From positions 124,001 through 188,000 of IMG/VR virus record IMGVR_UViG_3300028666_000022: a stretch of DNA of 64,000 nt; one strand, 5' to 3'. The notes under the pieces are model-generated. The model had not been told where the DNA came from, made no database searches, and saw nothing but the letters and a program-made list of their open reading frames with translations. A program made the position numbers and the translations under genes. This document shows, piece after piece, positions 3,225-20,857 of this stretch. Positions within the stretch are counted from its first letter, which is position 1, and every line of letters starts with the position of its first letter.

Positions 3225-4016
3225 TTAAAAATTCATTATTGAATTATTTCTATCGATATATGTTATACCATATTGATTTATTCCGCATGTTGTTAATGGA
3301 ACATTAGTGTCTAACCAATCTTCATTTGAATTTAAATTAATTTGAAAATCAGACATACTTGGATTTTTATCATAAGTATATTGAAAATATGTTTCAATAA
3401 ATCCAGGTTTTAATATTAATTGTCCCCCAATACTTGGTGATGGTCCAACAACATTTTCAACAATATTTGTATGAATTTCATCACTTAACGAATTGAATTT
3501 AAATGTAGTAATATTACAACTACAGCACGAAGAACAACATCCACATGAACAACAAGAACACGAGCAACAGCATGTACAACTACAACATCCACAAACATTA
3601 ATACTATTAATTGAATAATTAACAACTTTTTGAGAAGTTAATGGTGCATTATCTAATGTTTTAAGCCATAAATATAATGTTGAAATATTTTGATTTGGAT
3701 AACCACAATAGTGATTATTAATATTTGTTCCATTTACATTAAAAATAAGATTTTCGTCTTGAGTATTACCAATAACAATTGAACTTGTTGGTGTTTGTGT
3801 TGTTGTAGTAGTTGTAACCAATGGATCAACTGTTAATTCTTGTTGAAATGAACAACCATTTGAGTCTGTAATAATTAACGTATAAAAACCATTGGGTACA
3901 TCATCAAATTCATATGCACCAATAGCATCATGAACATTAACTGGAATTAAACTAGGTGTTAATTCTGCAGTAAAAGGTGCTACTCCACTAACTATCGTAT
4001 ATTTTATTGTTGACAT
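3225..4016 (-). CDS. Virion-associated protein: Ig/SprB-like N-domain, poly-Thr linker, internal poly-Cys tract
   Basis: SGVAPF...GFYTLIITDSNGC; VTTTTTTQTPT; 16 Cys in 26 aa at 3516-3593. Confidence 0.65.
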   Translation of the reverse strand: MSTIKYTIVSGVAPFTAELTPSLIPVNVHDAIGAYEFDDVPNGFYTLIITDSNGCSFQQELTVDPLVTTTTTTQTPTSSIVIGNTQDENLIFNVNGTNINNHYCGYPNQNISTLYLWLKTLDNAPLTSQKVVNYSINSINVCGCCSCTCCCSCSCCSCGCCSSCCSCNITTFKFNSLSDEIHTNIVENVVGPSPSIGGQLILKPGFIETYFQYTYDKNPSMSDFQINLNSNEDWLDTNVPLTTCGINQYGITYIDRNNSIMNF

Positions 4017-4041: not shown

Positions 4042-5271
4042 TTAACAACAACTGCCACATCCACAACAGCAACTATTGGAGGAAATAGTATTAAATTCAC
4101 TAACAGTAGTATTTGTTCCCAAAATAAAATTACCACCAATTTTACAAGCAATCGTAAACATACTAACAGTAGCACAATTTGTATAATTATAACCACAATT
4201 TGATAAATTACTATTTGCTATGGCATAAAATCTTAATGAATTAATATTTGTAGTATTAATATCAATATAATCATAATTGTGACATAAACAATTGCTAGTT
4301 GTTTGTGCTTGAAGAACCGTATTTATTGTGTTACAACAATTAGTATCACCAACAGTACAAACATATGAACAAGATGAGATTGATTGAGGTAAATTAACAA
4401 GACTACTTGATTGAGCACAGTCAACAAAACAAATTCTAAAACTTTGTCCAGAAGTTAAAGCAGGGGTTGTACTTATTGTTCCATATTTACAACCACATAC
4501 TAAAGGATTTGTAGTTAAATCAACGGGAACAAAATTTACGATAATTGGTGTTAATGTCGTTGTGGTAGTTGTTGTTGTAGGAACATTACTTTCATTTGTT
4601 TTTAATGTATTATTTAATATTGTTTCATTAAAACCAAACGGTATTGCACAAAATAATGTTAATACTGAACAACCACTTGTTGCAGTTGGTGTCGAACAAC
4701 ATGTACAGCAACTAGAAAATGAAGTAGATATGCTATAACGCAACAAATCTCCTTCACATAATGTAATCTGTGGTATTGTTTGAAAGTTATTATTTATATC
4801 ATATTTTACACTTATCCAATTATTGGTTCCATTTGCTTTACATGAAACACTAACATTACTATATAGTCCATTATTAGAATCACCCAAAGTACATGAATTA
4901 AAACATAAATTAACACATTCACCCATTGATAATGCTGGTGATATGTTTAAACAATCAGTAACACAGCAATTATTTGAACCAGCAGGTGAATTTGGTACAC
5001 CAGCTAAGTTAATTGTTTTTGTTGCTAATGTAGTTGTTCCTACTGTCACTGGTGTTGTAAATCCAGTACTAATTGAATTTCCAATATTATCTCTAACACT
5101 TAAACTATATGTAGTATTAGGAAATAATCCTCCAAATATATTACATGAACAACAAGTACTACCTGAATGCTCAATTATTTTTTGTTGCAAAACAGTATTA
5201 CAACCATTTAAACAAATTTGAGCAATGAATGGTTCAAAATTACCACCTATTTTAAATTTTAAATCACCCAT
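4042..5271 (-). CDS. Cys/Thr-rich virion-associated protein ending SCCCGCGSCC
   Basis: FN3-like N-terminus (LFPNTTYSLSVRD), PTTTTTTTTLTP linker, domain shared with 7506-9479. Confidence 0.65.
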   Translation of the reverse strand: MGDLKFKIGGNFEPFIAQICLNGCNTVLQQKIIEHSGSTCCSCNIFGGLFPNTTYSLSVRDNIGNSISTGFTTPVTVGTTTLATKTINLAGVPNSPAGSNNCCVTDCLNISPALSMGECVNLCFNSCTLGDSNNGLYSNVSVSCKANGTNNWISVKYDINNNFQTIPQITLCEGDLLRYSISTSFSSCCTCCSTPTATSGCSVLTLFCAIPFGFNETILNNTLKTNESNVPTTTTTTTTLTPIIVNFVPVDLTTNPLVCGCKYGTISTTPALTSGQSFRICFVDCAQSSSLVNLPQSISSCSYVCTVGDTNCCNTINTVLQAQTTSNCLCHNYDYIDINTTNINSLRFYAIANSNLSNCGYNYTNCATVSMFTIACKIGGNFILGTNTTVSEFNTISSNSCCCGCGSCC

Positions 5272-5273
5272 AA

Positions 5274-7451
5274 TTATACTATATTAATATTTTTGCTTAC
5301 AGTAAACATTATAATATTATTCAATCTTTCTCTAATTGAAACAACATAATTACCAGTACCATTAACATACAATTTTTTCGGTGCTCCAACAGTGCTAACC
5401 GTTTCCCAATTTAATGCTGAAGATGTTGATGGATGTATATTAAATTCTATCGTACCAACAATAGGATTAAAATTATTTGTAATAGTAAGTAAATAATTAC
5501 TTATTGTCACATATTTACCACCACTATCAGAATTTTGATTTAATGTAAATAAAGAATATAGTGGGTTACCAACAGCAACATAATCTCTTGAAAGCATAAA
5601 ATCAAATAAACCTCCAGTATCTCTAGTAACGATAGTATATGGTAAAGTAAACGTTAAGTCATTAAATATCGCTTCACCCAAATTAAATGATTGCCATTGA
5701 ATTGTAAAATCTGGAGCACCATAAGATTTAATTCCTATTGATGGTGTACCATATGTTATTCCAATATCACTTTGAAGTATTTTAATATTCGTTGGTCTAA
5801 TTTGAGTAATATTAAAATCTGGAATTAATCCACTTGGGGTAATTTGAGCATCATATAAATATAATGGACCGGTTGGGTTTGATATTGTAACACCACTTGT
5901 AACAACACAATTTGGTGATCCTAAATCATATAATTTTACTATATAATTACCAGTATTTAAATTATTAACTAATGTATTTCCAGTAATTGGTTGATAATAT
6001 AACCTATTAGTTCCACTAAGAACTTCAAGTATTAATTGTCCACTATTATTTTGTATATTATATATATTTATTTTACCATCAGTACCATTAATAATACTTG
6101 GTGAACTACCGCTAACATTATAAGTAACTAAACACCTGTTGCATCCAATTATGATATTATCATTAATTCCAACATTATAATTAGGTAGCGTCCATGATCT
6201 ATTTGATTTGTATGACATTGCAAATAATATTTCTTGATCTTCAATTACAAATATTTTTAAATCGTTAAAAATTTTACCAACAATATTACCCTGTAAATCA
6301 CCTAAATTATAATATGTGGTATTTAATGATCTTGTTACTCCAGTTAATGTTTTAACATCACCAATAGCTTTTAATGTTAAACCTAATTTTTTATTTGGTG
6401 ATTTATGCCACATTATAGTGGGAAGATTTAATGTAGGGGTATTTTTATATAATTCTTCTGCATATGTATTAGATGGTGAAGAATTTGTATAATGAATAAT
6501 TCCTAGTTTTTTTAAAACAGGAGCTTGGTTTTGAATGTATGAAACAAATCCACCATAAACATTACTTTTATATTCACCAAAATTTTTATTTGTTGTTTGA
6601 ACACCAATAATATTATCAGTATATACTATTGACATATTCCAAAAAGGAAATGTTATTGTAGGACATTGACTATTTTGAAGAAATGCAATAACTTCTTCAT
6701 TAATATAATCAGTAGAACTATTATTAAAAATTGATGTTCCAGTATAATTTATATAATTATAATAAACCAAAGCACCTGCAACAACATTACTTGAACCACC
6801 AATTAATTTACTAAAATCAGGTAAATTTCTATCTACTTGAATAATCAAATTATTATTACTTAATGTACCCGATGCAATATCTTGAATTTTATAAATTAAA
6901 TATGGTGTTGGATAATTAACATTAACACTATATCCTGTTGTATTAATACTATATGGATTTGTCCATTTAATTAATAATAGATCACCTATTTGCGGTTCAT
7001 TAACATTACCTTGATATGTTGGTGCTTTAAATAATTTTAGTAAAGTACCTCCACTCAGAGTATTTAATCTAATCATTACATCTGGTTGTTTAACATGATC
7101 ACTATCAGTAATAAATGTAGTTGTACCGCTATTTATTGAAAAAAATCCTATTGGTTGTACCGTATTTTGAATAATTGTTGGTGTTGATGGAACATTATTT
7201 ATTAAATTATATGAATCACCTGAATTATTTTTTGTAATAAACGATAAGATATTTGGATTTTTGTCTGCAGGTCTTAATATTAAAGAATTAAATGGATTAA
7301 AATTTGTTTCATTATTAAAATTATAATCAATTTCACTATCACCAATTGCAAAATATTTAAAATTTAAATTACCTTTAGATATTAATTCTCTACCCTTTGA
7401 AGTTAATTTTATATTTAAAACTATTGGATCTTTTTTATCAATAAATGCCAT
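5274..7451 (-). CDS. Tail/baseplate structural protein with appended Ig-like domains
   Basis: N-terminal LTSKGRELISKG..F.YFAIGDSE motif; beta-rich C-terminal half. Confidence 0.6.
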   Translation of the reverse strand: MAFIDKKDPIVLNIKLTSKGRELISKGNLNFKYFAIGDSEIDYNFNNETNFNPFNSLILRPADKNPNILSFITKNNSGDSYNLINNVPSTPTIIQNTVQPIGFFSINSGTTTFITDSDHVKQPDVMIRLNTLSGGTLLKLFKAPTYQGNVNEPQIGDLLLIKWTNPYSINTTGYSVNVNYPTPYLIYKIQDIASGTLSNNNLIIQVDRNLPDFSKLIGGSSNVVAGALVYYNYINYTGTSIFNNSSTDYINEEVIAFLQNSQCPTITFPFWNMSIVYTDNIIGVQTTNKNFGEYKSNVYGGFVSYIQNQAPVLKKLGIIHYTNSSPSNTYAEELYKNTPTLNLPTIMWHKSPNKKLGLTLKAIGDVKTLTGVTRSLNTTYYNLGDLQGNIVGKIFNDLKIFVIEDQEILFAMSYKSNRSWTLPNYNVGINDNIIIGCNRCLVTYNVSGSSPSIINGTDGKINIYNIQNNSGQLILEVLSGTNRLYYQPITGNTLVNNLNTGNYIVKLYDLGSPNCVVTSGVTISNPTGPLYLYDAQITPSGLIPDFNITQIRPTNIKILQSDIGITYGTPSIGIKSYGAPDFTIQWQSFNLGEAIFNDLTFTLPYTIVTRDTGGLFDFMLSRDYVAVGNPLYSLFTLNQNSDSGGKYVTISNYLLTITNNFNPIVGTIEFNIHPSTSSALNWETVSTVGAPKKLYVNGTGNYVVSIRERLNNIIMFTVSKNINIV

Positions 7452-7505: not shown

Positions 7506-9479
7506 TTAACAACAAGAACAACTACAAGAACAAGAGCAACTACAAGAACAAGAGCAACTACAAGAACAAGAGCAACTACAAGAACAAGAGCAACTACAAG
7601 AACAAGAGCAAGAATTACTTAAAGCATTATGCGTTGAATCGCAATGTTTATTTACATCTATACTTGGTATTATTCCAATGCTTGAATTAATTCCAATAAT
7701 ATCAATAATTGAACAAGCACATGATGTTCCATTATTTGCATTTAATTTATAACATAGAGTATCACCATTATTTATGTTAAACTGGATAATACCACTGTTT
7801 GGATTAATACTACTATCAACAAAACATTTGGTTAAATAAGTAGATCCTAATGATGGTTTACAACTAATTGTAACACAAGCAGTAGTATTATTACCACAAC
7901 AAGTACTACCACAACTAATTAAACAATATGAAAGACAAGTATTAATATATTCACCAATTGGTACTGGAATATTAGTGTTAATGTAACCATTAGTTAATGA
8001 AATTGATGCATTTTGATTACAAAAACTAAGTGTTATTGGCACTGCTGGATTTATATTAGAAGCACAATCACTTTTTAAGGAAACATTAAGTATTGGATTT
8101 ACACCAATTGACGATGTTAAATTAGTAATACATAATTTTTCACTAGAAGAATTACCGGGATTTGGAGAAACTAATGTTGACGTATAACATAAAGAATCAC
8201 CATTTCTTGCAATTATTGTTGCTGATTGTGGTTGTGACATTAAATTATTAACAGTAGAAACAGGAACAAATGCATTACAACCACAAACACTATTTGAATT
8301 ACATGTAAATATAATATTTGATGTGCCGCCAATGGTTGTAGTAACTGCAGATAAATTAATTGTAACACATTCTCCAACTGGAATTACGGGTGAAAAATTA
8401 AACACACCACCAATTGTACATGTTTTATTTGTAGACAAATATGTGTTTACTGTTCTATTTACTGATACATTTACATCTAATTGTGGCTTATTTGATATAA
8501 CATTTACCGAACATTTCGTTAAATTAATACTTGGGTTAGTTGTATTTAATCCATCAACTGAAGTAATACTAAAATTAGCGTTTGAATTTGACGCATAACT
8601 AACTGCATTAGTATTTACTGCATAACAAACAATATCACCATAACATAATGTAAGTGAACCGTTTCTCGGTGAAATTCCATTAGTATTTGTAATATTAACA
8701 AAATTAATAAAACAATTACAACCATTTGGTTTACAACTAAAACCAATTGAAGAACTACCATTACCAGTAACCAATGCATTAGCAACATAATTTATCTGAA
8801 TTTTTTGATCAGGAGCTAATACAGTTGGATTTATTTCAAAACAACCCGTTTCATAATTAGAAGTAGTATTAGTGACTGAAGTAATTTTCTTTATACTAAC
8901 CACTTTTGGTGTTAGAGTAACTGTAGTACTTGGTAATAAAATAAACATTGAAACTATTTTTGAATATTCGCACACAACATAATCTTTTTCAACTATATAA
9001 TCTCTAATCATTACATTATATATTTCATTTGGATCTAAATTTAAGAAAGTTGCACTATTTTGCCAAACAAAATTATTTGAATCACCCGTTGAGGGATAAA
9101 CCTTATATTGCATTATACCATTTGCACTACCAGCATTAGTTACTCTAACCCCACTAAGAAATTTATATATTAAAAAATTTGTATTTAATGTACAAAAATA
9201 ATTACTGCAATTAGGTTCACTATATGTTGAACCACTAATTAATATTTTCTTATGTATATCACTTTCAATATTAATGTGATTTAGAAAATCATTAATCCTA
9301 TTATTATATTCATTTATTGATATTGATTGTAATTGTTCTGTTGTTAATGTCGAATAAGTATTGGAATTAAATGTAAATGAATTTAATAAATTACATTGAA
9401 CAGTATTACCAGTATATGTTCCAAGTCCACAACTAATAACACAACTCATATTTAAATTATATTTTCTGGCAGTTCCCAT
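7506..9479 (-). CDS. Cys-rich virion-associated protein with three repeated beta-domains and a (Ser-Cys)17-Cys tail
   Basis: Repeats of P...G/D....I...C...GD..CY; C-terminal SC tract. Confidence 0.7.
   Translation of the reverse strand: MGTARKYNLNMSCVISCGLGTYTGNTVQCNLLNSFTFNSNTYSTLTTEQLQSISINEYNNRINDFLNHINIESDIHKKILISGSTYSEPNCSNYFCTLNTNFLIYKFLSGVRVTNAGSANGIMQYKVYPSTGDSNNFVWQNSATFLNLDPNEIYNVMIRDYIVEKDYVVCEYSKIVSMFILLPSTTVTLTPKVVSIKKITSVTNTTSNYETGCFEINPTVLAPDQKIQINYVANALVTGNGSSSIGFSCKPNGCNCFINFVNITNTNGISPRNGSLTLCYGDIVCYAVNTNAVSYASNSNANFSITSVDGLNTTNPSINLTKCSVNVISNKPQLDVNVSVNRTVNTYLSTNKTCTIGGVFNFSPVIPVGECVTINLSAVTTTIGGTSNIIFTCNSNSVCGCNAFVPVSTVNNLMSQPQSATIIARNGDSLCYTSTLVSPNPGNSSSEKLCITNLTSSIGVNPILNVSLKSDCASNINPAVPITLSFCNQNASISLTNGYINTNIPVPIGEYINTCLSYCLISCGSTCCGNNTTACVTISCKPSLGSTYLTKCFVDSSINPNSGIIQFNINNGDTLCYKLNANNGTSCACSIIDIIGINSSIGIIPSIDVNKHCDSTHNALSNSCSCSCSCSCSCSCSCSCSCSCSCSCSCSCSCSCC
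7521..7610. repeat. Perfect 18-bp tandem repeat x5 (ACTACAAGAACAAGAGCA) encoding CSCSCS
   Basis: Five exact copies read directly, with a partial copy at 7509-7520. Confidence 0.95.
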
Positions 9480-9481
9480 TT

Positions 9482-10399
9482 TTAAAAAATTATATTTTGA
9501 AAATTATTTTCAGTTTCTTTAATTTCTTTCACATAATTATATGAACAATATTCTTTACTACATTTCAATTCTTTATTAAATGGTGATATTTGATGCTGTG
9601 TTTTTAGAAAATAATACCCATTATTTATAACTGCACCTGCATTATGATAAATATTTGTATTTTCCCATTTTTTTATCACGTCTGTTGCCCAACAAAAATC
9701 AAGTTTTTTCATAATTTTTGTTTTATGACCAAAATACCAAGCATTCCATAAAACAGCCCACATATCTGCAGTCCATGCTTGAATTGGATGTTCTGGATTA
9801 TATTTGTGTGATGAATTAACCATAAATACATATAAGTTTTCTGAATCTTTTTCAACTTTTCTCCAAAAATCAGCATTTATGTTTTTCATTAAATATTGTG
9901 CACCACCTGCATTTTCATCATTTTCCTCAACAAGATTTGAATTAATTCCAACAATTTCACACATTTTATGAAATAATTCTTCACTTTTACTTTTAATATA
10001 TTGACTACTAATATATGATCTAGTATCACTTAAATACCATGTATTACTTTTTTCTAAATCTGCAAATTTCATTTTTTTAGTAAAAATTACATCTGGATCA
10101 ATATAAAAAAATATTTCATTTTCTGCATTTGGATATTTTTCAAAAAATTTAGCCAAAATGTGTGGTCTTAATGTTGATGAATATTGTGGATTAATTCTCT
10201 CATCATTAAAAATATAAAAACTACATTTACTATTAGTTTTTGTCATTATATTTGTCAACACACTACTTTTTTGTATTGAATTTTTACCTATAACATAAAT
10301 AACATCTTCATCTAGTCCAAGTTTTTTAAAATTGTTTATTTGGACAAGCATTTGCCATAAAAAATAATTACTGTCAGGTAATGCAATTAAAAATTTCAT
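9482..10399 (-). CDS. GT-A glycosyltransferase resembling peptidyl-Ser galactosyltransferase / Hyp arabinosyltransferase (GT96/GT95-like)
   Basis: NYFLWQ N-terminal motif, DPD (DxD), WTADMWA, IYHN; motif order resembles plant SERGT1/HPAT as recalled. Confidence 0.6.
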   Translation of the reverse strand: MKFLIALPDSNYFLWQMLVQINNFKKLGLDEDVIYVIGKNSIQKSSVLTNIMTKTNSKCSFYIFNDERINPQYSSTLRPHILAKFFEKYPNAENEIFFYIDPDVIFTKKMKFADLEKSNTWYLSDTRSYISSQYIKSKSEELFHKMCEIVGINSNLVEENDENAGGAQYLMKNINADFWRKVEKDSENLYVFMVNSSHKYNPEHPIQAWTADMWAVLWNAWYFGHKTKIMKKLDFCWATDVIKKWENTNIYHNAGAVINNGYYFLKTQHQISPFNKELKCSKEYCSYNYVKEIKETENNFQNIIF

Positions 10400-10402
10400 A
10401 TG

Positions 10403-13400
10403 TTATGGTGTTGATATTGTTGTGGTTATTATTGGTGGAACAATTATTGATATTTCACCATTTGGTGTAACATCTGAAACTGTTGGTGTTAATTGTGTTA
10501 ATGAACTAACTATTCCACTTGGTGAACCAATTAATTTTAATGCTTTGTTTTCTATAGTAATTTGAATACTATCTCCATTTGTCATTGAAATTATTGTATT
10601 ATTTACAATATTTAAAATATTTGCAGTAGTTTCTGAATTATTCATACTATAAATAACTACACTATTCTTTTTTATTGTAATAAACGAATCTGATTCATTT
10701 CCAGTACCACCAGTAATATATAATTTACTAATAAAATTCAAGCTAATATCTACATTATATCCCGGTAATATTGCTGGTGATACAACTAAATCATATGTAC
10801 TTTGACCATAATATCCTGTTTGTATATTTGTTGATATTGCTTGTTGTGCTGTTTCTGATTCAATAAATGTTAATATTGCACTAAATGGAAATGCTGTAGT
10901 TGTTGTAGTGTTTGTTGGATATGAAATAGTAATGCCACTAACAATAAAATTTTTACATAAATTTTTAACACAAACAAAATCATTTGTCCATTCAACTTCT
11001 TGTGATAATGGTCTTTTCAAGAAAACACTACCATCATTTCCCATATAATTTAATTGAGAATCAAAACTATATTTTACTCCACTACCTAATGTATTTGTGT
11101 TAATAAATCCCATATTAACACCTCTTTTATATGTGAATTTTTGTTTAGTAAAAACAGTATTTCTAACTAATAAACCACTTTTTCTTAATATTATCGTAGA
11201 AGAAAGTAATTCATCAACAAACTTCTGAAAAAATGCATTATATTTATTTAAAAATGGATATAAATTTTCAAAAGTATAACCATTAGAATGTAATGGATTA
11301 TTAACAGGTAGTTTACTTCTTTTTAAATAATCACTATAAACTTTTAATAATGTTGGATACCAACCTCCTTTAGAATCTGTAACAACTTTTCTGTTTCGAG
11401 CATTAATTAATTTTCTTTGTATTAATTCAATAAATTCAAGAAAAGATAATTTACTTATATCACCAACACCAAAATCATTACCTATTATTGGATTAAAGAA
11501 ATCATTACCACCTATAAGATAATAAACACTAATAACACTATTGAATCTCAATCCTCGTGGCAAATATATTTCATATGGATTATTTAAATTAAGACTATAA
11601 TCTGTTTGAGGTTCTAATGCAATACCATCAATTAATATTTTTACTTCTGAAGCATTTTTTACTTTATAATTTAACTTATAAACAAATTTATTTGCTGAAT
11701 TATTAAAATAAATTTTACTACTATTAAAACTATCAATTCTTAAAACCTCACTTCTTGCAGCAATACTTGTATTACCAGTGACAGTAATATATGCTACTTG
11801 TACGTAAGGATCTTCAGATAAATATGCAATAACATCAGAATTTTGAATTATTAATTCACTACTATTATTTGGATTAACAATATAGTCAGCAATAAATTGA
11901 TTTGTTCCTTTAGTTAAGGCAACACCATTTATTGTTAATTGAACATCTCCATTTGGTAAAGCGGGTAATGGAACAATCGTACCATTAAGATTTGGTTTTA
12001 CTCTAGTTGCAACATATTTTACTGTAACACCTGAAATTGCTGGTGTTAACCCATTATTATATAAATAAGTAGCTTCAACAACATCTCTATTACCATTAGC
12101 ATTTACTGCAGTTCCATTTATTTTAAACGTACTACCAGTAATACCATAATCACTCTCAAAATTAGTTATTCCTGTTGCTCCTGTTCTTGGGGTATTTAAT
12201 AAAATTCCATTAAATCTAACTTCAATATCACCGTCTGGAGTAAATGGAAGCGTAAATTTATTTGCACTAGTATTATATCCTAACGATAGGTTAACATAAG
12301 TATATGGAAGAGTATAACCACTTGAATTTGCTGGAAAATCAATGTCTTTAATATATGAGAACACATCATATTCAATTCCTCTGGCTAAATCTAATGATAC
12401 CTCAGTTTCTTTTGTATTTAAAACTAATCTACTATCTCCTTGATAATATTGCTGTGTTGAATAATAACTTCTAGTTGTTGCTCCTGTTTGAATCCAAGAT
12501 TTTTTATTATCAACAGTTTGCATTAAATTAAATCCAGCCAAACGAAAAGCATCCATATATGCTTGTCCACTATCAGTATCACCAGAAACTTGGAAAAAAT
12601 AATTACTTGTTTCTAATGGTGCAACAGGATAACCATCAGTATCATACGGTAATGAATTCGAAGGAAAATCTGCTTGTGTTAATGTTACTTCTCTAGGATC
12701 TATTTTTCCTTCAACAGTATAAACATATTCATTAATACTAATAAATGGTTCTGGAATACCAATCAACATAAATATTGATTTAATTGCTTCTCTTGTTCCT
12801 TTTGATTTCCAAAAATAATTGGTATTCATTAATATTCTTCGCCATAATTCAATGTTCACCTCTGCAGGAAGTAAATCAGTATGTAAATTTCTTTCAAGAT
12901 TATCAATTGTAAAAAAACTATCAACTAATTCAGCTTCATTCACTAATGAAAAATAATCCCAACCAAACGTCCTAGCTAAATTACTTACTAATTGATCTGG
13001 AATATTATTAACTTTATCATAAGTAATAGTATTAATATATACCAACGAATCAATAAATTCTCGCATTAAATCAAACTCTCTACCATAAATTCTTAAAAGT
13101 TTGGTCATTTTACCATCTTCTGTAAGATCATACGTCTTTAATGATAAGGGAGTTAAAAATCTTGCAATTAAATCAGTTTTTATACTATCATACTTTGAAC
13201 CAATGGTTAATGCAGTATCTAAAAATTTTTGATATGGTGAAGCACTAATATCTATATTATATCCATCAGTCGTTGTCCATAATACTGTTGCATTTGCGTA
13301 AACTATATTTCCATCGTCTAACAGAGTAGGTTCACTCATTTTAAATTGAAAACCTTGAATATCTACTCTTTCTGAAACAATATACTGTTCATATTTTTCT

Positions 13401-14149
13401 AAATTTGCCCTAAATTCTTCGAAAATAAAATTATTGGGTTTCATGTGATAATCAAAATATCCAGTAGTTGTATTACCAGTATTAAATGGGAATGGATTAC
13501 CTGAAGTTTTTATGGTAATATGATTTACTCCTGAAGTATCACCTGTAAACCCAACTACATTATATGAATTATTTGCATCGTATTTTGACCATATTACATA
13601 TTTTTCAAGAGATAAATTAATGTTTTTAATCTCTTGATTATTAGGAACACTTACATTACCTTGATTAAATATTAATCCAAATTTATTTTTAATAAATTCA
13701 GAAGGAACATCAAATGTTGATATATCTGTAAGTGGATCATAAACAAAATTATAAAAACTAATATTACCACCTCTATTTACCTTTGAACTAATATATAAAC
13801 TTCCGGGATATGCTAATATTATATTCTGTATCGAAACTCTTAAAAGTTCATAAGCCGAACCAAATCTAACAAAAGTATTTAAATCAGACTTATCGAGATT
13901 TAAAACAACATTGGTTGAAAAATCATGAAGCATTGAAGACTGACTAGAATTAACTCCTAGAGTGTCTAATGTTACTGGCCTAACGAAGGAAGAAAGCGAA
14001 TTTGAGTAGTCGACATTTTTTTTTCCATCAAAGTTTGAGGTGATACTAAAACTTCCTAAAGTAAAGATAGTCTCAGAAGTAGTATTGTTGAAATTTTCAC
14101 CATTTAAGTTCTGGTCAAGATTATTATTAATTACCTTTACTTTTGCCAC
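10403..14149 (-). CDS. Large baseplate wedge/tail structural protein (P2 gpI-like segment), GTG start
   Basis: LARTFGW...WKSKGTREAI motif; repeated V..NG..L....DY Ig-like units; C-terminal Thr linker plus beta-domain. Confidence 0.65.
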   Translation of the reverse strand: MAKVKVINNNLDQNLNGENFNNTTSETIFTLGSFSITSNFDGKKNVDYSNSLSSFVRPVTLDTLGVNSSQSSMLHDFSTNVVLNLDKSDLNTFVRFGSAYELLRVSIQNIILAYPGSLYISSKVNRGGNISFYNFVYDPLTDISTFDVPSEFIKNKFGLIFNQGNVSVPNNQEIKNINLSLEKYVIWSKYDANNSYNVVGFTGDTSGVNHITIKTSGNPFPFNTGNTTTGYFDYHMKPNNFIFEEFRANLEKYEQYIVSERVDIQGFQFKMSEPTLLDDGNIVYANATVLWTTTDGYNIDISASPYQKFLDTALTIGSKYDSIKTDLIARFLTPLSLKTYDLTEDGKMTKLLRIYGREFDLMREFIDSLVYINTITYDKVNNIPDQLVSNLARTFGWDYFSLVNEAELVDSFFTIDNLERNLHTDLLPAEVNIELWRRILMNTNYFWKSKGTREAIKSIFMLIGIPEPFISINEYVYTVEGKIDPREVTLTQADFPSNSLPYDTDGYPVAPLETSNYFFQVSGDTDSGQAYMDAFRLAGFNLMQTVDNKKSWIQTGATTRSYYSTQQYYQGDSRLVLNTKETEVSLDLARGIEYDVFSYIKDIDFPANSSGYTLPYTYVNLSLGYNTSANKFTLPFTPDGDIEVRFNGILLNTPRTGATGITNFESDYGITGSTFKINGTAVNANGNRDVVEATYLYNNGLTPAISGVTVKYVATRVKPNLNGTIVPLPALPNGDVQLTINGVALTKGTNQFIADYIVNPNNSSELIIQNSDVIAYLSEDPYVQVAYITVTGNTSIAARSEVLRIDSFNSSKIYFNNSANKFVYKLNYKVKNASEVKILIDGIALEPQTDYSLNLNNPYEIYLPRGLRFNSVISVYYLIGGNDFFNPIIGNDFGVGDISKLSFLEFIELIQRKLINARNRKVVTDSKGGWYPTLLKVYSDYLKRSKLPVNNPLHSNGYTFENLYPFLNKYNAFFQKFVDELLSSTIILRKSGLLVRNTVFTKQKFTYKRGVNMGFINTNTLGSGVKYSFDSQLNYMGNDGSVFLKRPLSQEVEWTNDFVCVKNLCKNFIVSGITISYPTNTTTTTAFPFSAILTFIESETAQQAISTNIQTGYYGQSTYDLVVSPAILPGYNVDISLNFISKLYITGGTGNESDSFITIKKNSVVIYSMNNSETTANILNIVNNTIISMTNGDSIQITIENKALKLIGSPSGIVSSLTQLTPTVSDVTPNGEISIIVPPIITTTISTP

Positions 14150-14244: not shown

Positions 14245-15141
14245 TTAAAAATTAGTTATGGTGTTAAAATCCTCGCTTGTATCAATATTAGATCGATTTG
14301 ATTTCACTTCAAAGAGAGGTACTCCACCAATACTATCCTTAATTTCGTATAAATCTGCTTGTTGCACGATGGAATGATTCTTATCATACCAGCTAACGAT
14401 TCCTTTAGTAACATCTTTAATTTGATCACCCCCTACAATTGTCATAATACTTTCTAAATTAACATCTGTTAGTTCAACTTCAATAGAAAGTGGAGTAAAA
14501 AATGTATTCGATATGATAATCGTTTGTCCCGGATTACCAATAAAAGGTGTTATATTTGGTTTTGTATTACTAGCCGATGAAGGAGTTAATTCTAAAAACA
14601 TTAAAGAACCTGAATCATCATAAGTATACCTAATTGAGCGTTGCGAACTAGAACCTTGGTTACTAGAGATCGGTGTTACTTTATTATTTGAAGTGACATA
14701 TCTGATAACGTTACGCATTTTAGTACCATCAATATTAATATATTCGATACGGTATCCTTGAAGACCATTATTTGAGCGTAATGCAGATGGTAAAGAATTA
14801 ACGTCTACAACTATGCCCTTCATATTTGGAAGTGAACTAAGCACCGAGCAATCGTTAACCACACAATAAAAAAACTTAGGTTTAATATAAATTGTATAAA
14901 AACCAATTTGATTAAAAACAGTAGCAGGTAACTTAAGAGTATAAAGGCCCTCTAAAATATTTTCATTACCGCTAATTTGTTCAGTAGGTGGTAAATAATT
15001 ATATGATAATACCTCACCTGCGTTTAAAGGAAGAATAGTATTATTAAGTGTTTCTCTATTGGGAGTATAACTATAATAGATGCTAATATCGTTAATGCTA
15101 ACATCCGAAGGTCTGTTTACTCCTATTGTGCCGATTGACAT
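14245..15141 (-). CDS. Probable baseplate-region structural protein
   Basis: Position in the baseplate operon; beta-rich composition. Confidence 0.55.
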   Translation of the reverse strand: MSIGTIGVNRPSDVSINDISIYYSYTPNRETLNNTILPLNAGEVLSYNYLPPTEQISGNENILEGLYTLKLPATVFNQIGFYTIYIKPKFFYCVVNDCSVLSSLPNMKGIVVDVNSLPSALRSNNGLQGYRIEYINIDGTKMRNVIRYVTSNNKVTPISSNQGSSSQRSIRYTYDDSGSLMFLELTPSSASNTKPNITPFIGNPGQTIIISNTFFTPLSIEVELTDVNLESIMTIVGGDQIKDVTKGIVSWYDKNHSIVQQADLYEIKDSIGGVPLFEVKSNRSNIDTSEDFNTITNF

Positions 15142-16124
15142 AATACTAATTTTAATAATTCTTCTTTAGTTATTGAACATTTGGTTCTTTTTGTCATATT
15201 ATCTTTCCAAGGTATGAATTCTAAATTATTTATTGAACCAATCATTTGAGGATCTATTTTATTGAAAAAACCTTCTGAAATTGAATATTTATGATCTAAA
15301 TTATATGCTCCAGCTTTACCAGAAACCCCTCTTTTTTCATAATTTTCTAATGTTTGTATTGGTTGTTTATTTGTTATTTTTATAACCACTTTTCTATACT
15401 TCTCATATTCTGATATTGTTTTTAAATATTCTTTATATGTTGTAACACCCCAACGTTTAATTAAACCAACTGAAACACCCTCACTTCTATTACGCATTAA
15501 TTTATTTTCAACTAAAAATTTTCTTATCACACCACTACCTAAAGATAATATTTTTTCAATTGTTTCAACACTTTCATATTCATTAACATATAGATTTATT
15601 ATATCTTCCTTTTGTTTTTCATTTAAACTCACCATTTTACCATCACTATTCCCTTTTCTTAAAATATTTAAACTTCTTAATAAATTTTTTATTGGTGTAT
15701 TACTACAATTAAAATAATCACCAATTTTACGAGTATTTAAATTTTCAATCAAATACATGTTTTTTATTTTTAAAATATCTTCTTCAGAAAACATAATTTT
15801 AAGATCATCTCTATTTTTAATAAAAACATTATTTTTTATCAAAATTTTAGTTATGAATTTTTTAGAATGATGTGATATAGTTTCAATTTGTGTAACACTA
15901 TTTCCTTTTTGATATAATAAAATAATTTCATTAATTTCGTTATCACTATATTCATCTAATTGTTTTCTTTTATCTCTATTTTCTATCCAAACATTATTCT
16001 CAATTAAAATTTTCTTAATGTTTTTTTTATCCATCTTCATCTTATTTCTAATTACAAATACTGACATTCCAGAATTATATAATAAAATAATTTCTGAAAT
16101 TATTGATTCACCATAGTCTTTCAT
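15123..16124 (-). CDS. Free-standing HNH-like homing endonuclease with repeated HTH units
   Basis: Four II.LY..G.S...I HTH-like repeats; C-terminal LDHKYS...NNLEFIPWKDN..K. Confidence 0.7.
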   Translation of the reverse strand: MKDYGESIISEIILLYNSGMSVFVIRNKMKMDKKNIKKILIENNVWIENRDKRKQLDEYSDNEINEIILLYQKGNSVTQIETISHHSKKFITKILIKNNVFIKNRDDLKIMFSEEDILKIKNMYLIENLNTRKIGDYFNCSNTPIKNLLRSLNILRKGNSDGKMVSLNEKQKEDIINLYVNEYESVETIEKILSLGSGVIRKFLVENKLMRNRSEGVSVGLIKRWGVTTYKEYLKTISEYEKYRKVVIKITNKQPIQTLENYEKRGVSGKAGAYNLDHKYSISEGFFNKIDPQMIGSINNLEFIPWKDNMTKRTKCSITKEELLKLVLCQSAQ

Positions 16125-16150: not shown

Positions 16151-16840
16151 TTACGTATTTTTTACAATATTAAAGAATTTACCTGCAGCATAGGTTTCAA
16201 TATCAACCAAACTTTTCATATATTCGAGTTTATAATTTTTATCAAATGCCGATAATTCTTGTCTAGTTATAAATACATCATTAATGATTTTTGGATTACT
16301 AATGATATTATCTTTATTAGGATCTTTAAATATTGGAGCATTAATAAAATCAGGACTATTAGTGCCTTGTGGAGTATAACTAAAACAAGTACAATTATTT
16401 ACACCACAAGAATTAAATTTATCAATATATTTGATACCACCAATATAATAAACAACACATTGTGAAACACTTGAATTCTGATAATCAACACCATCATTAA
16501 CTATTGATGAACCACAAGAACAATCACAACTAGTTCCACTATTACTAATACGAGCAATATATTGATTATTAAAATCAGATGTTATAGTATATTTACGTAA
16601 TTCACTTAATCTACTTGTAGAAGTTCCAGTCACTGTTGGCAATAAAGTCCAAACAGTATTATTAGTAGTTATACCTGTGTAAGCATCAAAAAAACCAATG
16701 TCTTGTGATTCAGAAGTTAATAGAATATTAATATGGTAAATAGCTTTCAAATCAGGTATTATTGTTCTACAATTACCTGTACATGTAGAAGTAATACCTG
16801 TTGTAACTATTTGTTTTATCTTTTTTTTAATTAATTCCAT
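16151..16840 (-). CDS. Probable structural protein with a Cys insert (TSCDCSCGSS)
   Basis: Baseplate operon context. Confidence 0.55.
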   Translation of the reverse strand: MELIKKKIKQIVTTGITSTCTGNCRTIIPDLKAIYHINILLTSESQDIGFFDAYTGITTNNTVWTLLPTVTGTSTSRLSELRKYTITSDFNNQYIARISNSGTSCDCSCGSSIVNDGVDYQNSSVSQCVVYYIGGIKYIDKFNSCGVNNCTCFSYTPQGTNSPDFINAPIFKDPNKDNIISNPKIINDVFITRQELSAFDKNYKLEYMKSLVDIETYAAGKFFNIVKNT

Positions 16841-16870: not shown

Positions 16871-18718
16871 TTAACTAACACTTTTACGCAACAAAATCTT
16901 AATATCTTTCGAAGGTTCCTTGATTTCAAACATACTATCCTCTGTTGCATAAATTGTATTATTAATTATGTTAATCTCACCAGTACTTGAATTTAGTATT
17001 TGTTGAGAAATAACATTATTTGAATACGTACCACCAACCTTATTAAAAACTTTGATATTAATAACATTAATTACTCCATTTACAGCATTTATTTCACTTT
17101 GAAGTTGTGCTAAGAATATATTGGTGTCCATTTCATATTTATTTATATCAAAATAATTAGTAACAACAGTAATAATACTATTTGCTATCTGATTATCTGA
17201 TATGTTTTGAACATAAACATCAATTTCAAAACCTAAATTAATTATTTTACCGTCTTTAATTTCAATAAAATCATTCATCATTCTATATCCGCTCAGATAT
17301 TCAGTAATATTATTTTTTAATAATGTATTACTAGTATTTGATAATTTACCATCTGCCCCAATACCTAATATACTTATAACTACTTTATTGTTTAACTTAA
17401 ATGCATTTGCTCTAAATGGTGAACCAAACTTACCCGGCATTTTATAAACCTGAAGCAAATAATCAGTTAATGTTACTGCCCTTCCTTGACTACTAAAATT
17501 ATAACTAATTAGGTTTCTAATCTGTTCTATACTCAAACCATCATTTCCGCCAATTGCTGGGATCGGATTAACTGCACGGAGACTTTTTTGGACAGCCGTA
17601 TTCAAATCCTGTCTCGATCCATTGACCCGTAGATTAGCATTTCCTATTTGAGTAAGAATATTAGCTCCAATATTAGAATTACTTCCACCACCAGTTCTAT
17701 ATCTTACAAATAATGTATAATTAGGTTTTAGTTTTTCTCCTAAAGCAGTGTTATTTAAAAAATTATCGAGAAATGCTCTATTTGTTACTCCTTCTTTAAT
17801 GAATCCATTTTTAAATGCATTAACATCAGAATCACCAGAACCAAAAGTTAAAACACAAAATCCATTATCAGTATATTCTTTAATAAATTTTTTAGTTATG
17901 TCCATCCATATAGCAGCTTTAGTACCACCTGAAGTAACTGAACTATTTAGGTTTTCAACAAATATCCTCTGTTGTGCTAAATAATCTACTTCATAATAAA
18001 TATTATTTGCTGTATAAAAATCTGAAACTGAAGGGTTACTTGAAAAATTTGTACCTTCTAATAGTATTACATTTTCTATTTCAATAACATCTGGATCTGG
18101 TAATGTTATTGAAAAAAATGGAACAACATCATTAGTGCTTATTACTCTTTTATATATATTTGTGCTACCATTTATAACAATTTCTCTTTTAGTAATAGTA
18201 TAACTTACAACAATACCATTTGAATCTAAATTTGGTATAATAGAACGATTTGGATCACCTAAATTACTAACTGGAGATGAAAAGTCTATTGTTTCTGTAG
18301 TTTCAAAAATTTTACCACCTCCGATTGCTTGAAAACCCGGTGGAATTTGAGGAAAATAACTAGGATCTGGACGATCTCCAAGAACCGGAACGCTTACGGA
18401 TATGTCTAATAATGTTACAGACGGCCTACGTGCTGGTATATTAAACCCCAAATTTTTAGCTATATTTCTTAAACTACTGATTTGCTGACTGTTAGCAAGT
18501 TGAGTTTCATTAAAAACTCGATCTGTATTTATTGATAAATTATTGGTAACACCAGCATTTAAATCAATTAATAAGGTTCCAATTGAAGAATCGCTAAAAT
18601 CCCCCAAAACTTCTGGATATGAGGTCTTTATATAATTAATTAAATCAGTTTTTATGTCCGAAAACGTTAACGAATTATAACGAACTATATTTGTAATATT
18701 TGTATTATTATTTGCCAT
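16871..18718 (-). CDS. Baseplate wedge subunit (T4 gp6 / baseplate J-like)
   Basis: F.DIKTDLINYIK...DFSDSSIG..LIDL; YRTGGG..SN; GG.D..SIEQIR; RAVTLTDY. Confidence 0.85.
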   Translation of the reverse strand: MANNNTNITNIVRYNSLTFSDIKTDLINYIKTSYPEVLGDFSDSSIGTLLIDLNAGVTNNLSINTDRVFNETQLANSQQISSLRNIAKNLGFNIPARRPSVTLLDISVSVPVLGDRPDPSYFPQIPPGFQAIGGGKIFETTETIDFSSPVSNLGDPNRSIIPNLDSNGIVVSYTITKREIVINGSTNIYKRVISTNDVVPFFSITLPDPDVIEIENVILLEGTNFSSNPSVSDFYTANNIYYEVDYLAQQRIFVENLNSSVTSGGTKAAIWMDITKKFIKEYTDNGFCVLTFGSGDSDVNAFKNGFIKEGVTNRAFLDNFLNNTALGEKLKPNYTLFVRYRTGGGSNSNIGANILTQIGNANLRVNGSRQDLNTAVQKSLRAVNPIPAIGGNDGLSIEQIRNLISYNFSSQGRAVTLTDYLLQVYKMPGKFGSPFRANAFKLNNKVVISILGIGADGKLSNTSNTLLKNNITEYLSGYRMMNDFIEIKDGKIINLGFEIDVYVQNISDNQIANSIITVVTNYFDINKYEMDTNIFLAQLQSEINAVNGVINVINIKVFNKVGGTYSNNVISQQILNSSTGEINIINNTIYATEDSMFEIKEPSKDIKILLRKSVS

Positions 18719-20458: not shown

Positions 20459-20857
20459 TTAAAAACTTAAATCCAGACTTCCATTTTCAAAGAAATTATC
20501 TTGACTATATTGAAATAGTATATTTACATTTATTTGTGTTTCTGGAATAGGATTACCATTATCATCAATATTCCAATTAAATGTTACTTTAGTAATTTTT
20601 AATGCTGGTATATAAAGAGACACAGTATTTTTTATTTCTTCTTCAATATCACTAGCAGAATTTTGATCGTTCATTTCAAACACATATTTCAAAAGACCCG
20701 TTCCAAATTGCGGCATCATATATCTTTCTCCACGCTGCGTTAATAATAATAGTAATAAATCAGAGGTTAGTGCATCTTTACTAACTTGATTGGTTGAAAA
20801 ATATGTGTTAGTATCAGGACTATCAGTTAAAGGAAACTTTATATTATATGAAATCAT
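20459..20857 (-). CDS. Baseplate gp25/gpW-like protein
   Basis: LLLLLTQRGER.MMPQFGT.L..YVFE motif. Confidence 0.85.
   Translation of the reverse strand: MISYNIKFPLTDSPDTNTYFSTNQVSKDALTSDLLLLLLTQRGERYMMPQFGTGLLKYVFEMNDQNSASDIEEEIKNTVSLYIPALKITKVTFNWNIDDNGNPIPETQINVNILFQYSQDNFFENGSLDLSF

What the first reader, a model, noticed from the sequence alone, without database searches (positions are those of the whole stretch)
7506..7616. (Ser-Cys)17-Cys C-terminal tail built from a perfect 18-bp tandem repeat
Seen: five exact copies of an 18-mer (7521-7610) give 18 Cys in the last 35 residues. Exact DNA identity implies recent slippage, so tail length is probably variable among relatives. Inference: a strictly alternating SC tract would put all thiols on one face of an extended strand. 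It could be a tunable acceptor array for the adjacent glycosyltransferase, a metal/mineral-binding tail (metallothionein/phytochelatin-like) or a disulfide cross-linking zipper.
Basis: partly seen in the sequence, partly recalled or inferred. Interest (0 to 1): 0.75.

Follow-up and report, generated by a model that had tools for sequence, protein, structure and literature searches.

The report
Length-variable Ser-Cys tail on phage fibre protein
A giant soil phage has put a real 35-residue tail of alternating serine and cysteine, whose length varies, on the end of a tail-fibre-module protein; this is one of four such cysteine tracts found only in this phage, and its function is untested.

Summary
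ORF 7506-9479 (-) encodes 657 aa ending in (SC)17C, built from five exact 18-bp units. The window lies in a 339,898-bp, 25% GC jumbo myophage from a rhizosphere metagenome. The gene sits in the baseplate/tail-fibre module and encodes a string of Cys-rich beta-sandwich domains.

No homolog (32-51% identity) has the tail. Public assemblies of the otherwise identical phage carry two alleles, (SC)17C and (SC)8C, differing by exactly three units. k-mer depths support five units in the deepest run and a lower mean in two others.

The same genome has three more poly-Cys tracts in virion-module proteins. These are not DNA repeats, and orthologs lack them.

The neighbouring 305-aa gene does have a GT-A glycosyltransferase fold, but it is conserved where the tail is absent. 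No YcaO, LanC, SPASM maturase or thiol oxidoreductase is encoded.

Best reading, at low confidence: an exposed thiol patch, tunable by slippage, that cross-links through disulfides or metal. Rivals are metal or mineral adhesion and a tolerated slippage product.

Side discovery: in many unrelated phages, alternating (Asn/Ala-Cys)n tracts, mostly C-terminal and some on fibre proteins, lie just upstream of a radical SAM/SPASM cassette. This phage lacks that cassette.

The parts
7506..9479 (-). Gene for a 657-aa Cys-rich (7.9% Cys; 5.5% without the tail) virion-module protein. It has a conserved N-terminal region, one beta domain, three paralogous beta-sandwich modules (about residues 186-325, 326-470, 471-622), then the tail.
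7509..7613 (-). Coding sequence of the (SC)17C tail, residues 623-657. AlphaFold2 pLDDT is 35-44, so it is predicted disordered or at best a weak hairpin.
7519..7611 (.). Perfect 18-bp tandem run with five exact units at 7521-7610. The locus is length-polymorphic; the short allele lacks 54 bp (three units).
9482..10399 (-). 305-aa GT-A-fold glycosyltransferase-like protein (phrog_4417) with an invariant D-P-D motif. It is conserved immediately upstream of the orthologous gene in all relatives.
4045..4074 (-). C-terminal tail SCCCGCGSCC of the 409-aa neighbour (gene 4042-5271, 9.3% Cys). It shares the beta-sandwich module type. The tract is not a DNA repeat and orthologs lack it.
3516..3593 (-). 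Internal tract CGCCSCTCCCSCSCCSCGCCSSCCSC (16 Cys in 26 residues) of the 263-aa protein (gene 3225-4016). It sits at a hypervariable insertion site. It is not a DNA repeat and orthologs lack it.
5274..7451 (-). 725-aa gene 54 bp downstream of the tail. It is a syntenic member of the module, is Cys-poor (0.6%), and has no family match.
10403..14149 (-). 1248-aa syntenic module protein upstream of the glycosyltransferase-like gene. No family match.
16871..18718 (-). gp6-like baseplate wedge subunit, which places the cluster in the baseplate/tail-fibre module.
20459..20857 (-). gp25-like baseplate wedge subunit.

Best explanation
The tail is a genuine, recently expanded (Ser-Cys)n appendage at the C-terminus of a Cys-rich protein made of a string of beta-sandwich domains. 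The gene lies in the baseplate/tail-fibre module of an uncultured 340-kb myophage. Slippage or unequal recombination of an 18-bp unit that encodes (SC)3 sets its length; (SC)17C and (SC)8C alleles are on record. It is one of four tracts made only of Cys plus Ser, Gly or Thr that this phage lineage alone carries, all at C-termini or a variable loop of these proteins. Inferred mechanism: the tract stays reduced, and probably metal-loaded, in the host cytoplasm. Once the virion is released it acts as an exposed multivalent thiol patch that cross-links. It could form an intrachain CxC 'cystine ladder' hairpin or interchain disulfides, or thiolate-metal-thiolate bridges. Either would staple the ends of fibre subunits or neighbouring Cys-tagged proteins. 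Shown: sequence, reality of the repeat, length alleles, lineage specificity, genomic context. Inferred: exposure of the tail, thiol chemistry, cross-linking.
For: The repeat and its copy number are real, and two length alleles exist. Four poly-Cys tracts occur in G000, against none in relative G001 and only the ortholog's own tracts in G002. All orthologs lack the tracts. The three other tracts use mixed codons, so they are not fresh slippage products. Their spacers are only S, G and T; none is one of the bulky or charged single-step neighbours of TGT (F, Y, W, R). I read that as selection on the peptide. Homologs append extra domains at this same C-terminus, and the internal tract sits where one ortholog has an insert of about 85 aa, so these sites tolerate additions. 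The gene lies downstream of gp25-like and gp6-like baseplate genes. Covalent Cys networks between baseplate and fibres have precedent in phage Pam3 (PMC9942802), Milano (PMC10811340) and Jabs (10.64898/2026.07.24.740622). Independent (x-Cys)n C-terminal tails on other phage fibre proteins show that such tails recur on fibres.
Against: There is no experimental or structural evidence for any thiol chemistry here. The tail is modelled at pLDDT 35-44. The oligomeric state is unknown; the trimer test gave no verdict. The phage encodes no thioredoxin, glutaredoxin, DsbA or Erv1-type enzyme. Relatives do without the tail, so it is dispensable for assembly. If the C-terminus is the distal tip, the tail may sit far from the other tagged proteins, which would favour adhesion over internal stapling. 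Perfect repeat identity means that most of the length is evolutionarily very young.
Confidence: 0.3

Rival explanations
1. The tail is a metallothionein- or phytochelatin-like metal-thiolate tail used for adhesion. The thiolates would bind Zn, Cu, Fe or Cd, or metal-sulfide and mineral surfaces, or thiol- or metal-bearing host surface structures, at the free end of the fibre protein. More repeats would give higher avidity.
For: Cys density is 51%, in CxC and CC motifs, with only small hydrophilic spacers and no aromatic residues or His. This matches the compositional definition of metallothioneins (established knowledge). The tract sits at a C-terminus where homologs append extra domains. Three proteins of the same fibre module are tagged. 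The source is a rhizosphere metagenome, and a peat run also holds part of the sequence. A natural poly-Cys-tailed protein that binds Fe, Ni and Zn is known (PMC2954182).
Against: No metal-handling gene or other context points to metals. The tract is an appendage on a 657-aa protein, not a small free metallothionein. Nothing was tested. It is not shown that the C-terminus is the distal end of the fibre.
Confidence: 0.25
2. The long tail is a functionless by-product. A short ancestral Cys-rich end was expanded by replication slippage and is simply tolerated, because a disordered C-terminal extension does little harm.
For: The units are perfectly identical, so the expansion is very recent. Two length alleles coexist with otherwise identical flanks. 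All relatives lack the tail. Hexanucleotide TG-rich microsatellites are common in viral contigs.
Against: Four independent tracts occur in one genome, three of them among seven adjacent structural genes and none in relative G001. The other tracts have diversified codons and a restricted spacer alphabet. Among the sampled IMG/VR loci with CxC-coding DNA, only one listed ORF of 150 aa or more carried such a tract at its C-terminus (L232); one more (L298) turned up in loci fetched by that scan. Eighteen unpaired thiols on a virion surface are unlikely to be neutral.
Confidence: 0.2
3. The tail is a substrate for post-translational modification. Option (a): O- or S-glycosylation by the adjacent GT-A enzyme. 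Option (b): RiPP-like cross-linking or heterocyclisation by an enzyme not recognised here, for example a host enzyme, analogous to the radical SAM/SPASM cassette next to (Asn/Ala-Cys)n tracts in other phages.
For: The GT-A fold of the neighbour is supported. Atlas neighbours include HPAT-type peptide glycosyltransferases and PqqD-HPAT fusions. Homologs sit inside tail modules of cultured phages. For option (b), 26 of 27 radical SAM/SPASM loci carry an alternating x-Cys tract just upstream.
Against: The glycosyltransferase is conserved next to tail-less orthologs. G000 has no homolog of the three cassette proteins and no YcaO or LanC. Its two radical SAM proteins are KamA-family and RlmN/Cfr-like. 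The spacer is Ser, not Asn or Ala.
Confidence: 0.15
4. The repeat is an artefact of assembly, or acts at the DNA or RNA level (terminator, or a Cys-tRNA-sensing attenuator for the downstream gene) rather than as peptide.
For: Assemblies disagree on copy number. Poly-Cys leader ORFs act as attenuators in mycobacteria (bioRxiv 10.1101/834739). The next gene starts 54 bp downstream.
Against: k-mer depth matches five units, and two assemblies agree on each allele. There is no terminator-like site, and RNA folding is no better than shuffles (z = -0.87). The tract is in frame at the end of a 620-aa conserved ORF, and one of the other tracts is internal.
Confidence: 0.04

Closest known systems
(Asn/Ala-Cys)n tracts next to a radical SAM/SPASM + 2OG-oxygenase-like + ~275-aa cassette, in fibre-like or small phage proteins
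   Same: Strictly alternating x-Cys tract at or near the extreme C-terminus. In L232 the carrier is a tail-fibre protein by PHROG hits, and in L298 it is a gene of the tail module. Some tails end in CC. The tail is lineage-specific while the fibre body is unrelated.
   Different: Spacers are Asn, Ala, Asp or Gln, not Ser. There are 4-8 Cys, not 18, and no DNA tandem repeat was noted. The tract is always followed by the maturase cassette, which G000 lacks.
Covalent disulfide networks in phage virions (Pam3 fibre-to-wedge Cys-rich regions, PMC9942802; Milano sheath, PMC10811340; Jabs, 10.64898/2026.07.24.740622)
   Same: Cys-rich patches on baseplate, fibre and tail proteins that act after assembly, giving redox-dependent stabilisation.
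   Different: Those use a few positioned Cys in folded loops. Here the tract is low-complexity, probably disordered, made of 18 Cys, and encoded by a variable tandem repeat. No disulfide has been shown here.
Metallothioneins and phytochelatins; poly-Cys/His-tailed metalloprotein Ts-PCHTP (PMC2954182)
   Same: CxC and CC motifs, 30-50% Cys, small hydrophilic spacers, no aromatic residues. Phytochelatins also have every second residue as Cys.
   Different: This is not a small free protein or an enzymatically made peptide. It is a tail on a 657-aa virion-module protein. There is no sequence homology and metal binding is untested.
Cystine-ladder beta-hairpins (theta-defensins, protegrins, tachyplesins; from established knowledge)
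   Same: A CxCxC pattern on paired strands puts the Cys on one face and allows parallel cross-strand disulfides. AlphaFold2 draws a hairpin for the tail.
   Different: Known ladders have 2-3 rungs in peptides of about 18 residues. The hairpin here is modelled at pLDDT below 50.
In-frame tandem-repeat (VNTR) length variation in phage fibre or receptor-binding proteins and bacterial surface proteins (established knowledge)
   Same: Perfect in-frame repeat units, with copy number differing between otherwise identical genomes.
   Different: The (Ser-Cys)n composition has, as far as I could find, no precedent.
Virion glycosylation by phage-encoded glycosyltransferases acting on Ser/Thr-rich C-terminal extensions of mycobacteriophage capsid and tail-tube proteins (recalled from the literature, not retrieved here)
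   Same: A glycosyltransferase gene embedded in the structural module, and a hydroxyl-rich C-terminal extension.
   Different: The enzyme here is conserved irrespective of the tail. The invariant poly-Thr tracts of the neighbouring proteins are better acceptor candidates.

Membership tests
In-frame tandem-repeat (VNTR) length-variable locus | Head-to-tail, near-identical units whose length is a multiple of 3, inside an ORF | tested here: met
   18-bp unit, five exact copies, in frame
In-frame tandem-repeat (VNTR) length-variable locus | Copy number differs between otherwise identical genomes or populations | tested here: met
   657-aa allele in JGI 3300028666 and ENA ERZ27245387; 639-aa allele in ERZ27245386 and ERZ27245396; flanks are 100% identical. 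k-mer depth ratios are 4.4/3.3 in X1, against 1.3-1.5 in X2 and 1.8-2.0 in X4. Caveat: the short allele equals the minimal path through a k=29/39 de Bruijn loop, so assembler collapse is not fully excluded.
Metallothionein | High Cys content in CxC/CC/CxxC motifs, without aromatic residues or His | tested here: met
   18 Cys in 35 residues, spacers all Ser; the other tracts use only S, G and T as spacers
Metallothionein | Small free protein (under about 10 kDa) homologous to a known metallothionein family | tested here: not met
   The tract is a tail on a 657-aa protein; no Pfam or NCBIfam match
Metallothionein | Stoichiometric metal-thiolate clusters | not testable with these tools
   Needs ICP-MS or spectroscopy on the expressed tail
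Thiazole/oxazole-modified (TOMM) or lanthipeptide-type RiPP core | A YcaO cyclodehydratase, or LanB/LanC/LanM, encoded with the substrate | tested here: not met
   No YcaO (PF02624) or LanC-like (PF05147) match in the complete 340-kb genome; the YcaO control genomes rang, while the LanC-like control rang only below the family's cut-off
(x-Cys)n tract + radical SAM/SPASM cassette of phages (defined here) | Alternating x-Cys tract at or near the C-terminus of a fibre-module protein | tested here: met
   (SC)17C at the C-terminus, gene in the baseplate/fibre module
(x-Cys)n tract + radical SAM/SPASM cassette of phages (defined here) | Downstream cassette: ~275-aa protein, 2OG-oxygenase-like protein, radical SAM/SPASM maturase | tested here: not met
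   tblastn of all cassette proteins against G000, G001 and G002 gave no hit at E <= 0.01; G000's radical SAM proteins are KamA-family and RlmN/Cfr-like
Phage virion disulfide network (Pam3-like) | Cys-rich regions on baseplate or fibre proteins | tested here: met
   7.9%, 9.3% and 7.2% Cys in three module proteins, against 0.2-1.6% in most neighbours (one, 16151-16840, has 3.9%)
Phage virion disulfide network (Pam3-like) | Demonstrated inter-subunit disulfides (structure, MS, DTT sensitivity) | not testable with these tools
   The phage is uncultured; the tail is modelled at pLDDT 35-44
Acceptor tail of a structural-module glycosyltransferase | Adjacent gene is a glycosyltransferase | tested here: met
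   AlphaFold2 pLDDT 89.8; all 50 top Foldseek PDB hits are GT-A enzymes (E down to 7e-7); invariant DPD motif. No Pfam sequence match.
Acceptor tail of a structural-module glycosyltransferase | Enzyme and acceptor tail co-occur across relatives | tested here: not met
   The enzyme is present and 60-78% identical in 10 relatives whose orthologs lack the tail

The most novel reading that the evidence does not exclude
Alternating (x-Cys)n C-terminal tails are an undescribed, recurrent class of appendage on phage fibre proteins. In many lineages a dedicated radical SAM/SPASM + 2OG-oxygenase cassette matures them into cross-linked structures. The (SC)n tail here would be a cassette-free version, tunable by slippage, that reaches a comparable cross-linked or metal-bound state spontaneously. 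The four Cys tags of this phage would then form one co-adapted thiol-chemistry system on the virion.
Probability: 0.2. Interest if true: 0.85.

Novelty: new variant of a known kind. Interest (0 to 1): 0.6.

Why it matters
If the tail is functional, it would be the first natural case of a phage adding a tunable poly-thiol tag to its host-recognition apparatus. That bears on how virions are stabilised, or stick to surfaces, in soils and wetlands. It would also give a ready-made genetically encoded thiol or metal handle for phage engineering. The length polymorphism makes it a natural experiment on dosage. The side discovery may matter more: (Asn/Ala-Cys)n tracts are tightly linked to a radical SAM/SPASM cassette across phages with 30-68% GC. 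That points to RiPP-style enzymatic maturation of structural virion proteins, which I could not find described.

Tried and rejected
- **phmmer of the 40-aa tail against 1.84 billion representatives:** 0 hits. This is uninformative, probably because the query is short and of low complexity; it says nothing about rarity.
- **ESM Atlas look-ups:** the 657-aa and 294-aa proteins gave poor models and no usable hits.
- **PDB sequence searches:** the 657-, 725- and 1248-aa proteins and the 305-aa profile gave nothing significant.
- **Pfam, PHROG and NCBIfam:** no match for the Cys-tagged proteins.
- **tblastn of the protein against cultured phages:** no match.
- **Complex prediction, three copies of residues 1-190:** no verdict, score 0.00. 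This is not evidence for or against oligomerisation.
- **RNA runs:** none was listed, so transcription is untested.
- **TOMM or lanthipeptide reading:** rejected, because the genome has no YcaO or LanC.
- **Phage-encoded redox help:** rejected, because there is no thioredoxin, glutaredoxin or DsbA. The Erv1 search is uninformative because its controls did not ring.
- **Terminator or RNA structure at the repeat:** rejected.
- **Alternative genetic code:** not needed. Genes are dense and open under table 11.
- **Eukaryote-style S-palmitoylation or prenylation of -CC ends:** considered and dismissed, because this is a tailed phage with baseplate genes.
Full report
**Observation**

The minus-strand ORF 7506-9479 encodes 657 aa. 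Its last 35 residues are (SC)17C, so 18 of the last 35 residues are Cys. The DNA holds five exact copies of an 18-mer at 7521-7610, inside a perfectly periodic run at 7519-7611. TRF scores the array at 5.6 copies and 98% matches.

The unit reads TCT TGT TCT TGT AGT TGC. The (SC)3 peptide was therefore already encoded by diverged codons before the 18-bp unit was amplified. Of the six frames, only the SC frame continues a long conserved ORF.

**Context**

- The window is positions 124,001-188,000 of a 339,898-bp IMG/VR virus record with direct terminal repeats. Its GC content is 25%.
- The record is contig Ga0265336_10000007, and the runs that hold it are labelled rhizosphere metagenome.
- PHROG matches identify a tailed phage: gp25-like and gp6-like baseplate wedge subunits, family-B DNA polymerase, a helicase and homing endonucleases.
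- Downstream of the baseplate genes lies a gene series that is syntenic in eleven related contigs: about 300 aa, 1000-1250 aa, 305 aa, about 620 aa (the gene in question), about 740 aa, about 400 aa, about 240 aa and 251 aa.
- AlphaFold2 on an 11-sequence alignment gives mean pLDDT 76.6. It shows a poorly modelled N-terminal region, one beta domain and three beta-sandwich modules. The tail has pLDDT 35-44.
- The three modules are paralogous and share an SCKPNG...GD.LCY signature. The 409-aa neighbour has the same module.
- Foldseek finds only generic strings of Ig/Fn3-like domains, such as integrin legs, the PrgB adhesin and GhpA.

**Is the tail conserved?**

No. Ten database homologs (34-47% identity) and eleven IMG/VR loci (32-51%) end a few residues before the tail starts, or carry extra folded domains there. 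The 36-mer made of two units occurs in no other viral or metagenome contig of the collections.

**Is the length variable?**

Exact look-ups found the same phage in several samples of one project.

- The 657-aa allele is in the JGI contig and in ENA ERZ27245387.
- A 639-aa allele is in ENA ERZ27245386 (a 339,750-bp contig) and ERZ27245396.
- The two alleles differ by exactly 54 bp, or three units. The short one encodes (SC)8C. Flanks are 100% identical over 3-10 kb.

Logan unitig depths give a test that does not depend on the assembler. I computed the expected 31-mer multiplicities as 4, 3 and 3.5 for the long allele and 1, 0 and 0.5 for the short one.

| Run | Observed ratio to flank | Expected, long allele | Expected, short allele |
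|---|---|---|---|
| X1 | 4.4 and 3.3 | 4 and 3 | 1 and 0 |
| X2 | 1.3-1.5 | 3 | 0 |
| X4 | 1.8-2.0 | 3.5 | 0.5 |

The deep sample therefore carries five units or slightly more. The two shallow samples fit a roughly even mixture of the two alleles.

One caveat remains. The short allele's 39-nt run equals the minimal path through a k=29/39 de Bruijn loop, so collapse by the assembler cannot be fully excluded without spanning reads. I put real polymorphism at about 70-75%.

**Not an isolated oddity**

A scan of all ORFs in the genome found four proteins with poly-Cys tracts:

- this tail;
- SCCCGCGSCC at the C-terminus of the 409-aa neighbour;
- CGCCSCTCCCSCSCCSCGCCSSCCSC inside the 263-aa neighbour;
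- SCGSTSCCSCCCCC at the C-terminus of a 294-aa protein at genome position 265 kb.

The last three use mixed codons and are not DNA repeats. Orthologs lack every one of them. The internal tract sits exactly where another ortholog has an insert of about 85 aa.

Related complete genome G001 has no such tract. G002 has tracts only in the ortholog of this protein. In this genome's three other tracts the spacers are only Ser, Gly and Thr. Phe, Tyr, Trp and Arg, which are equally close to TGT by mutation, never occur. I take this as evidence for selection on the peptide.

**The neighbouring 'glycosyltransferase'**

The 305-aa protein (phrog_4417) has no Pfam match but folds confidently, at pLDDT 89.8. 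All 50 best PDB matches are GT-A glycosyltransferases, including WbbM, LgtC, the UGGT catalytic domain, GTA/GTB and glycogenin, with E-values down to 7e-7. Atlas neighbours include HPAT-type enzymes. D101-P-D103 is invariant.

The protein is 60-78% identical across relatives whose fibre protein has no tail. It also occurs in 77 cultured phages, for example directly after the major tail protein gene of Enterococcus phage phiFL1A. It is therefore probably an enzyme that modifies virion proteins, but the SC tail is not its defining substrate. The invariant poly-Thr tracts of the 263- and 409-aa proteins are better acceptor candidates.

**Enzymes that could process a Ser/Cys tract**

The complete genome has no YcaO or LanC, and no thioredoxin, glutaredoxin or DsbA. 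Its two radical SAM proteins are a KamA-family aminomutase and an RlmN/Cfr-like protein.

**A related class elsewhere**

I scanned IMG/VR for DNA encoding CxCxCxCxCC followed by a stop. Most hits were microsatellites in short ORFs. Two unrelated phage proteins stood out. One, 205 aa with PHROG tail-fibre matches, ends in ...YNCNCACNCNCC. The other, 342 aa and lying in the tail module, ends in ...FNCACNCDCTCC.

Both are followed by the same three genes:

- a protein of about 275 aa;
- a 2OG-Fe(II)-oxygenase-like protein;
- a radical SAM/SPASM peptide-maturase-like enzyme. Its SPASM domain scores above the curated cut-off, and its nearest subfamilies are PapB, CcpM and anSME.

Searching with that maturase returned 31 loci with 30-68% GC. 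Of the 27 with enough upstream sequence, 26 carry an alternating (Asn/Ala/Asp-Cys)n tract within about 3 kb upstream, and 24 of these are at or near a C-terminus. I found no paper describing this. The present phage has no homolog of the cassette.

**Interpretation**

The data show a real Ser-Cys tail that is specific to this lineage and polymorphic in length, on a protein of the fibre module. It is part of a genome-specific set of Cys tags. What the thiols do is inference.

- I favour cross-linking after release, by disulfide or metal bridges (0.30). This rests on the co-occurrence of several tags in one virion module and on solved precedents in Pam3, Milano and Jabs.
- Next comes metallothionein-like metal or mineral adhesion (0.25).
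- Then a tolerated slippage product (0.20).
- Then enzymatic modification (0.15).
- The artefact or RNA-level readings are unlikely (0.04).

**Novelty**

This is a new variant of known themes: tandem-repeat length variation in fibre proteins, and Cys-mediated virion chemistry. The composition has no precedent that I could find. The link between (x-Cys)n tracts and radical SAM/SPASM genes deserves its own follow-up.

Noticed in passing
L232:6339-9723; L298:9087-12900; L392-L422 (IMG/VR loci): Genes ending in alternating (Asn/Ala/Asp-Cys)n tracts, some of them tail-fibre proteins and many encoding only 92-138 aa (e.g. NCNCACNCNCC*, NCNCNCNC*, CYSNCNCNCNCDCNCGNCSNCK*), are followed by a conserved cassette: a ~275-aa protein, a 2OG-Fe(II)-oxygenase-like protein and a radical SAM/SPASM maturase-like enzyme. 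26 of 27 loci with upstream sequence show the tract, across 30-68% GC. This looks like RiPP-style maturation of phage structural proteins. No paper was found.
   Followed up: partly
window 9482-10399 (-); L176 (Enterococcus phage phiFL1A gp51): phrog_4417, annotated 'unknown function', has a GT-A glycosyltransferase fold with an invariant DPD motif. It sits inside tail structural modules of at least 77 cultured phages (Lactobacillus, Enterococcus, Staphylococcus, Clostridium, Chryseobacterium). It is a candidate virion-protein glycosyltransferase.
   Followed up: partly
window 3798-3815 and 4555-4578 (-): A T6 tract in the 263-aa protein is invariant across its orthologs, and a T8 tract in the 409-aa protein is conserved in four of six. 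They look like inter-domain linkers and are plausible O-glycosylation sites for the neighbouring GT-A enzyme.
   Followed up: no
window 3516-3593, 4045-4074; genome 265113-265997 (L016:7114-7998): Three further poly-Cys tracts (16 of 26, 6 of 10 and 8 of 14 residues Cys) that are not encoded by DNA repeats. Orthologs in relatives lack them. The 294-aa carrier at 265 kb has no family match.
   Followed up: yes
L008:5989-8319 (G002 ortholog): The ortholog in a 327-kb relative has its own two short Cys clusters at other positions (TCCICCINTSTCGC near residue 43, TCCYCSCSDVGSCC near residue 474). This protein family has therefore gained Cys tracts repeatedly.
   Followed up: partly
window 7506-7640 (-), frame +1 relative to the gene: Across the repeat a second minus-strand frame is also open. 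It encodes a purely hydrophobic L/V/A stretch (VILALVLVVALVLVV...) that runs past the SC stop codon. It is reachable only by frameshifting, and no slippery site was examined.
   Followed up: no
window 55063-57150 (-), TRF array 55475-55594: A 695-aa protein built from about 13-aa repeats (NSVAMxGGxACGx) that resemble YadA/Hep_Hag head repeats, with a Cys in most repeats. The 296-aa neighbour (54133-55023) is similar. They are probably further fibre or adhesin proteins, in a block of higher GC (0.29-0.33).
   Followed up: no
window 18724-20424, 15123-16124, 40669-42546, 50255-51268: HNH or homing-endonuclease-like genes interrupt the baseplate module (one lies between the gp25-like and gp6-like genes) and other regions. 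The 69/138-bp tandem arrays at 41650-41956 and 50615-51009 lie inside two of them.
   Followed up: no
genome 67-1341 (L014) and about 81 kb (L015:1018-2028): The phage encodes a KamA-family radical SAM aminomutase (320 bits against a cut-off of 199) and an RlmN/Cfr-like radical SAM protein. Neither lies near the fibre module.
   Followed up: partly
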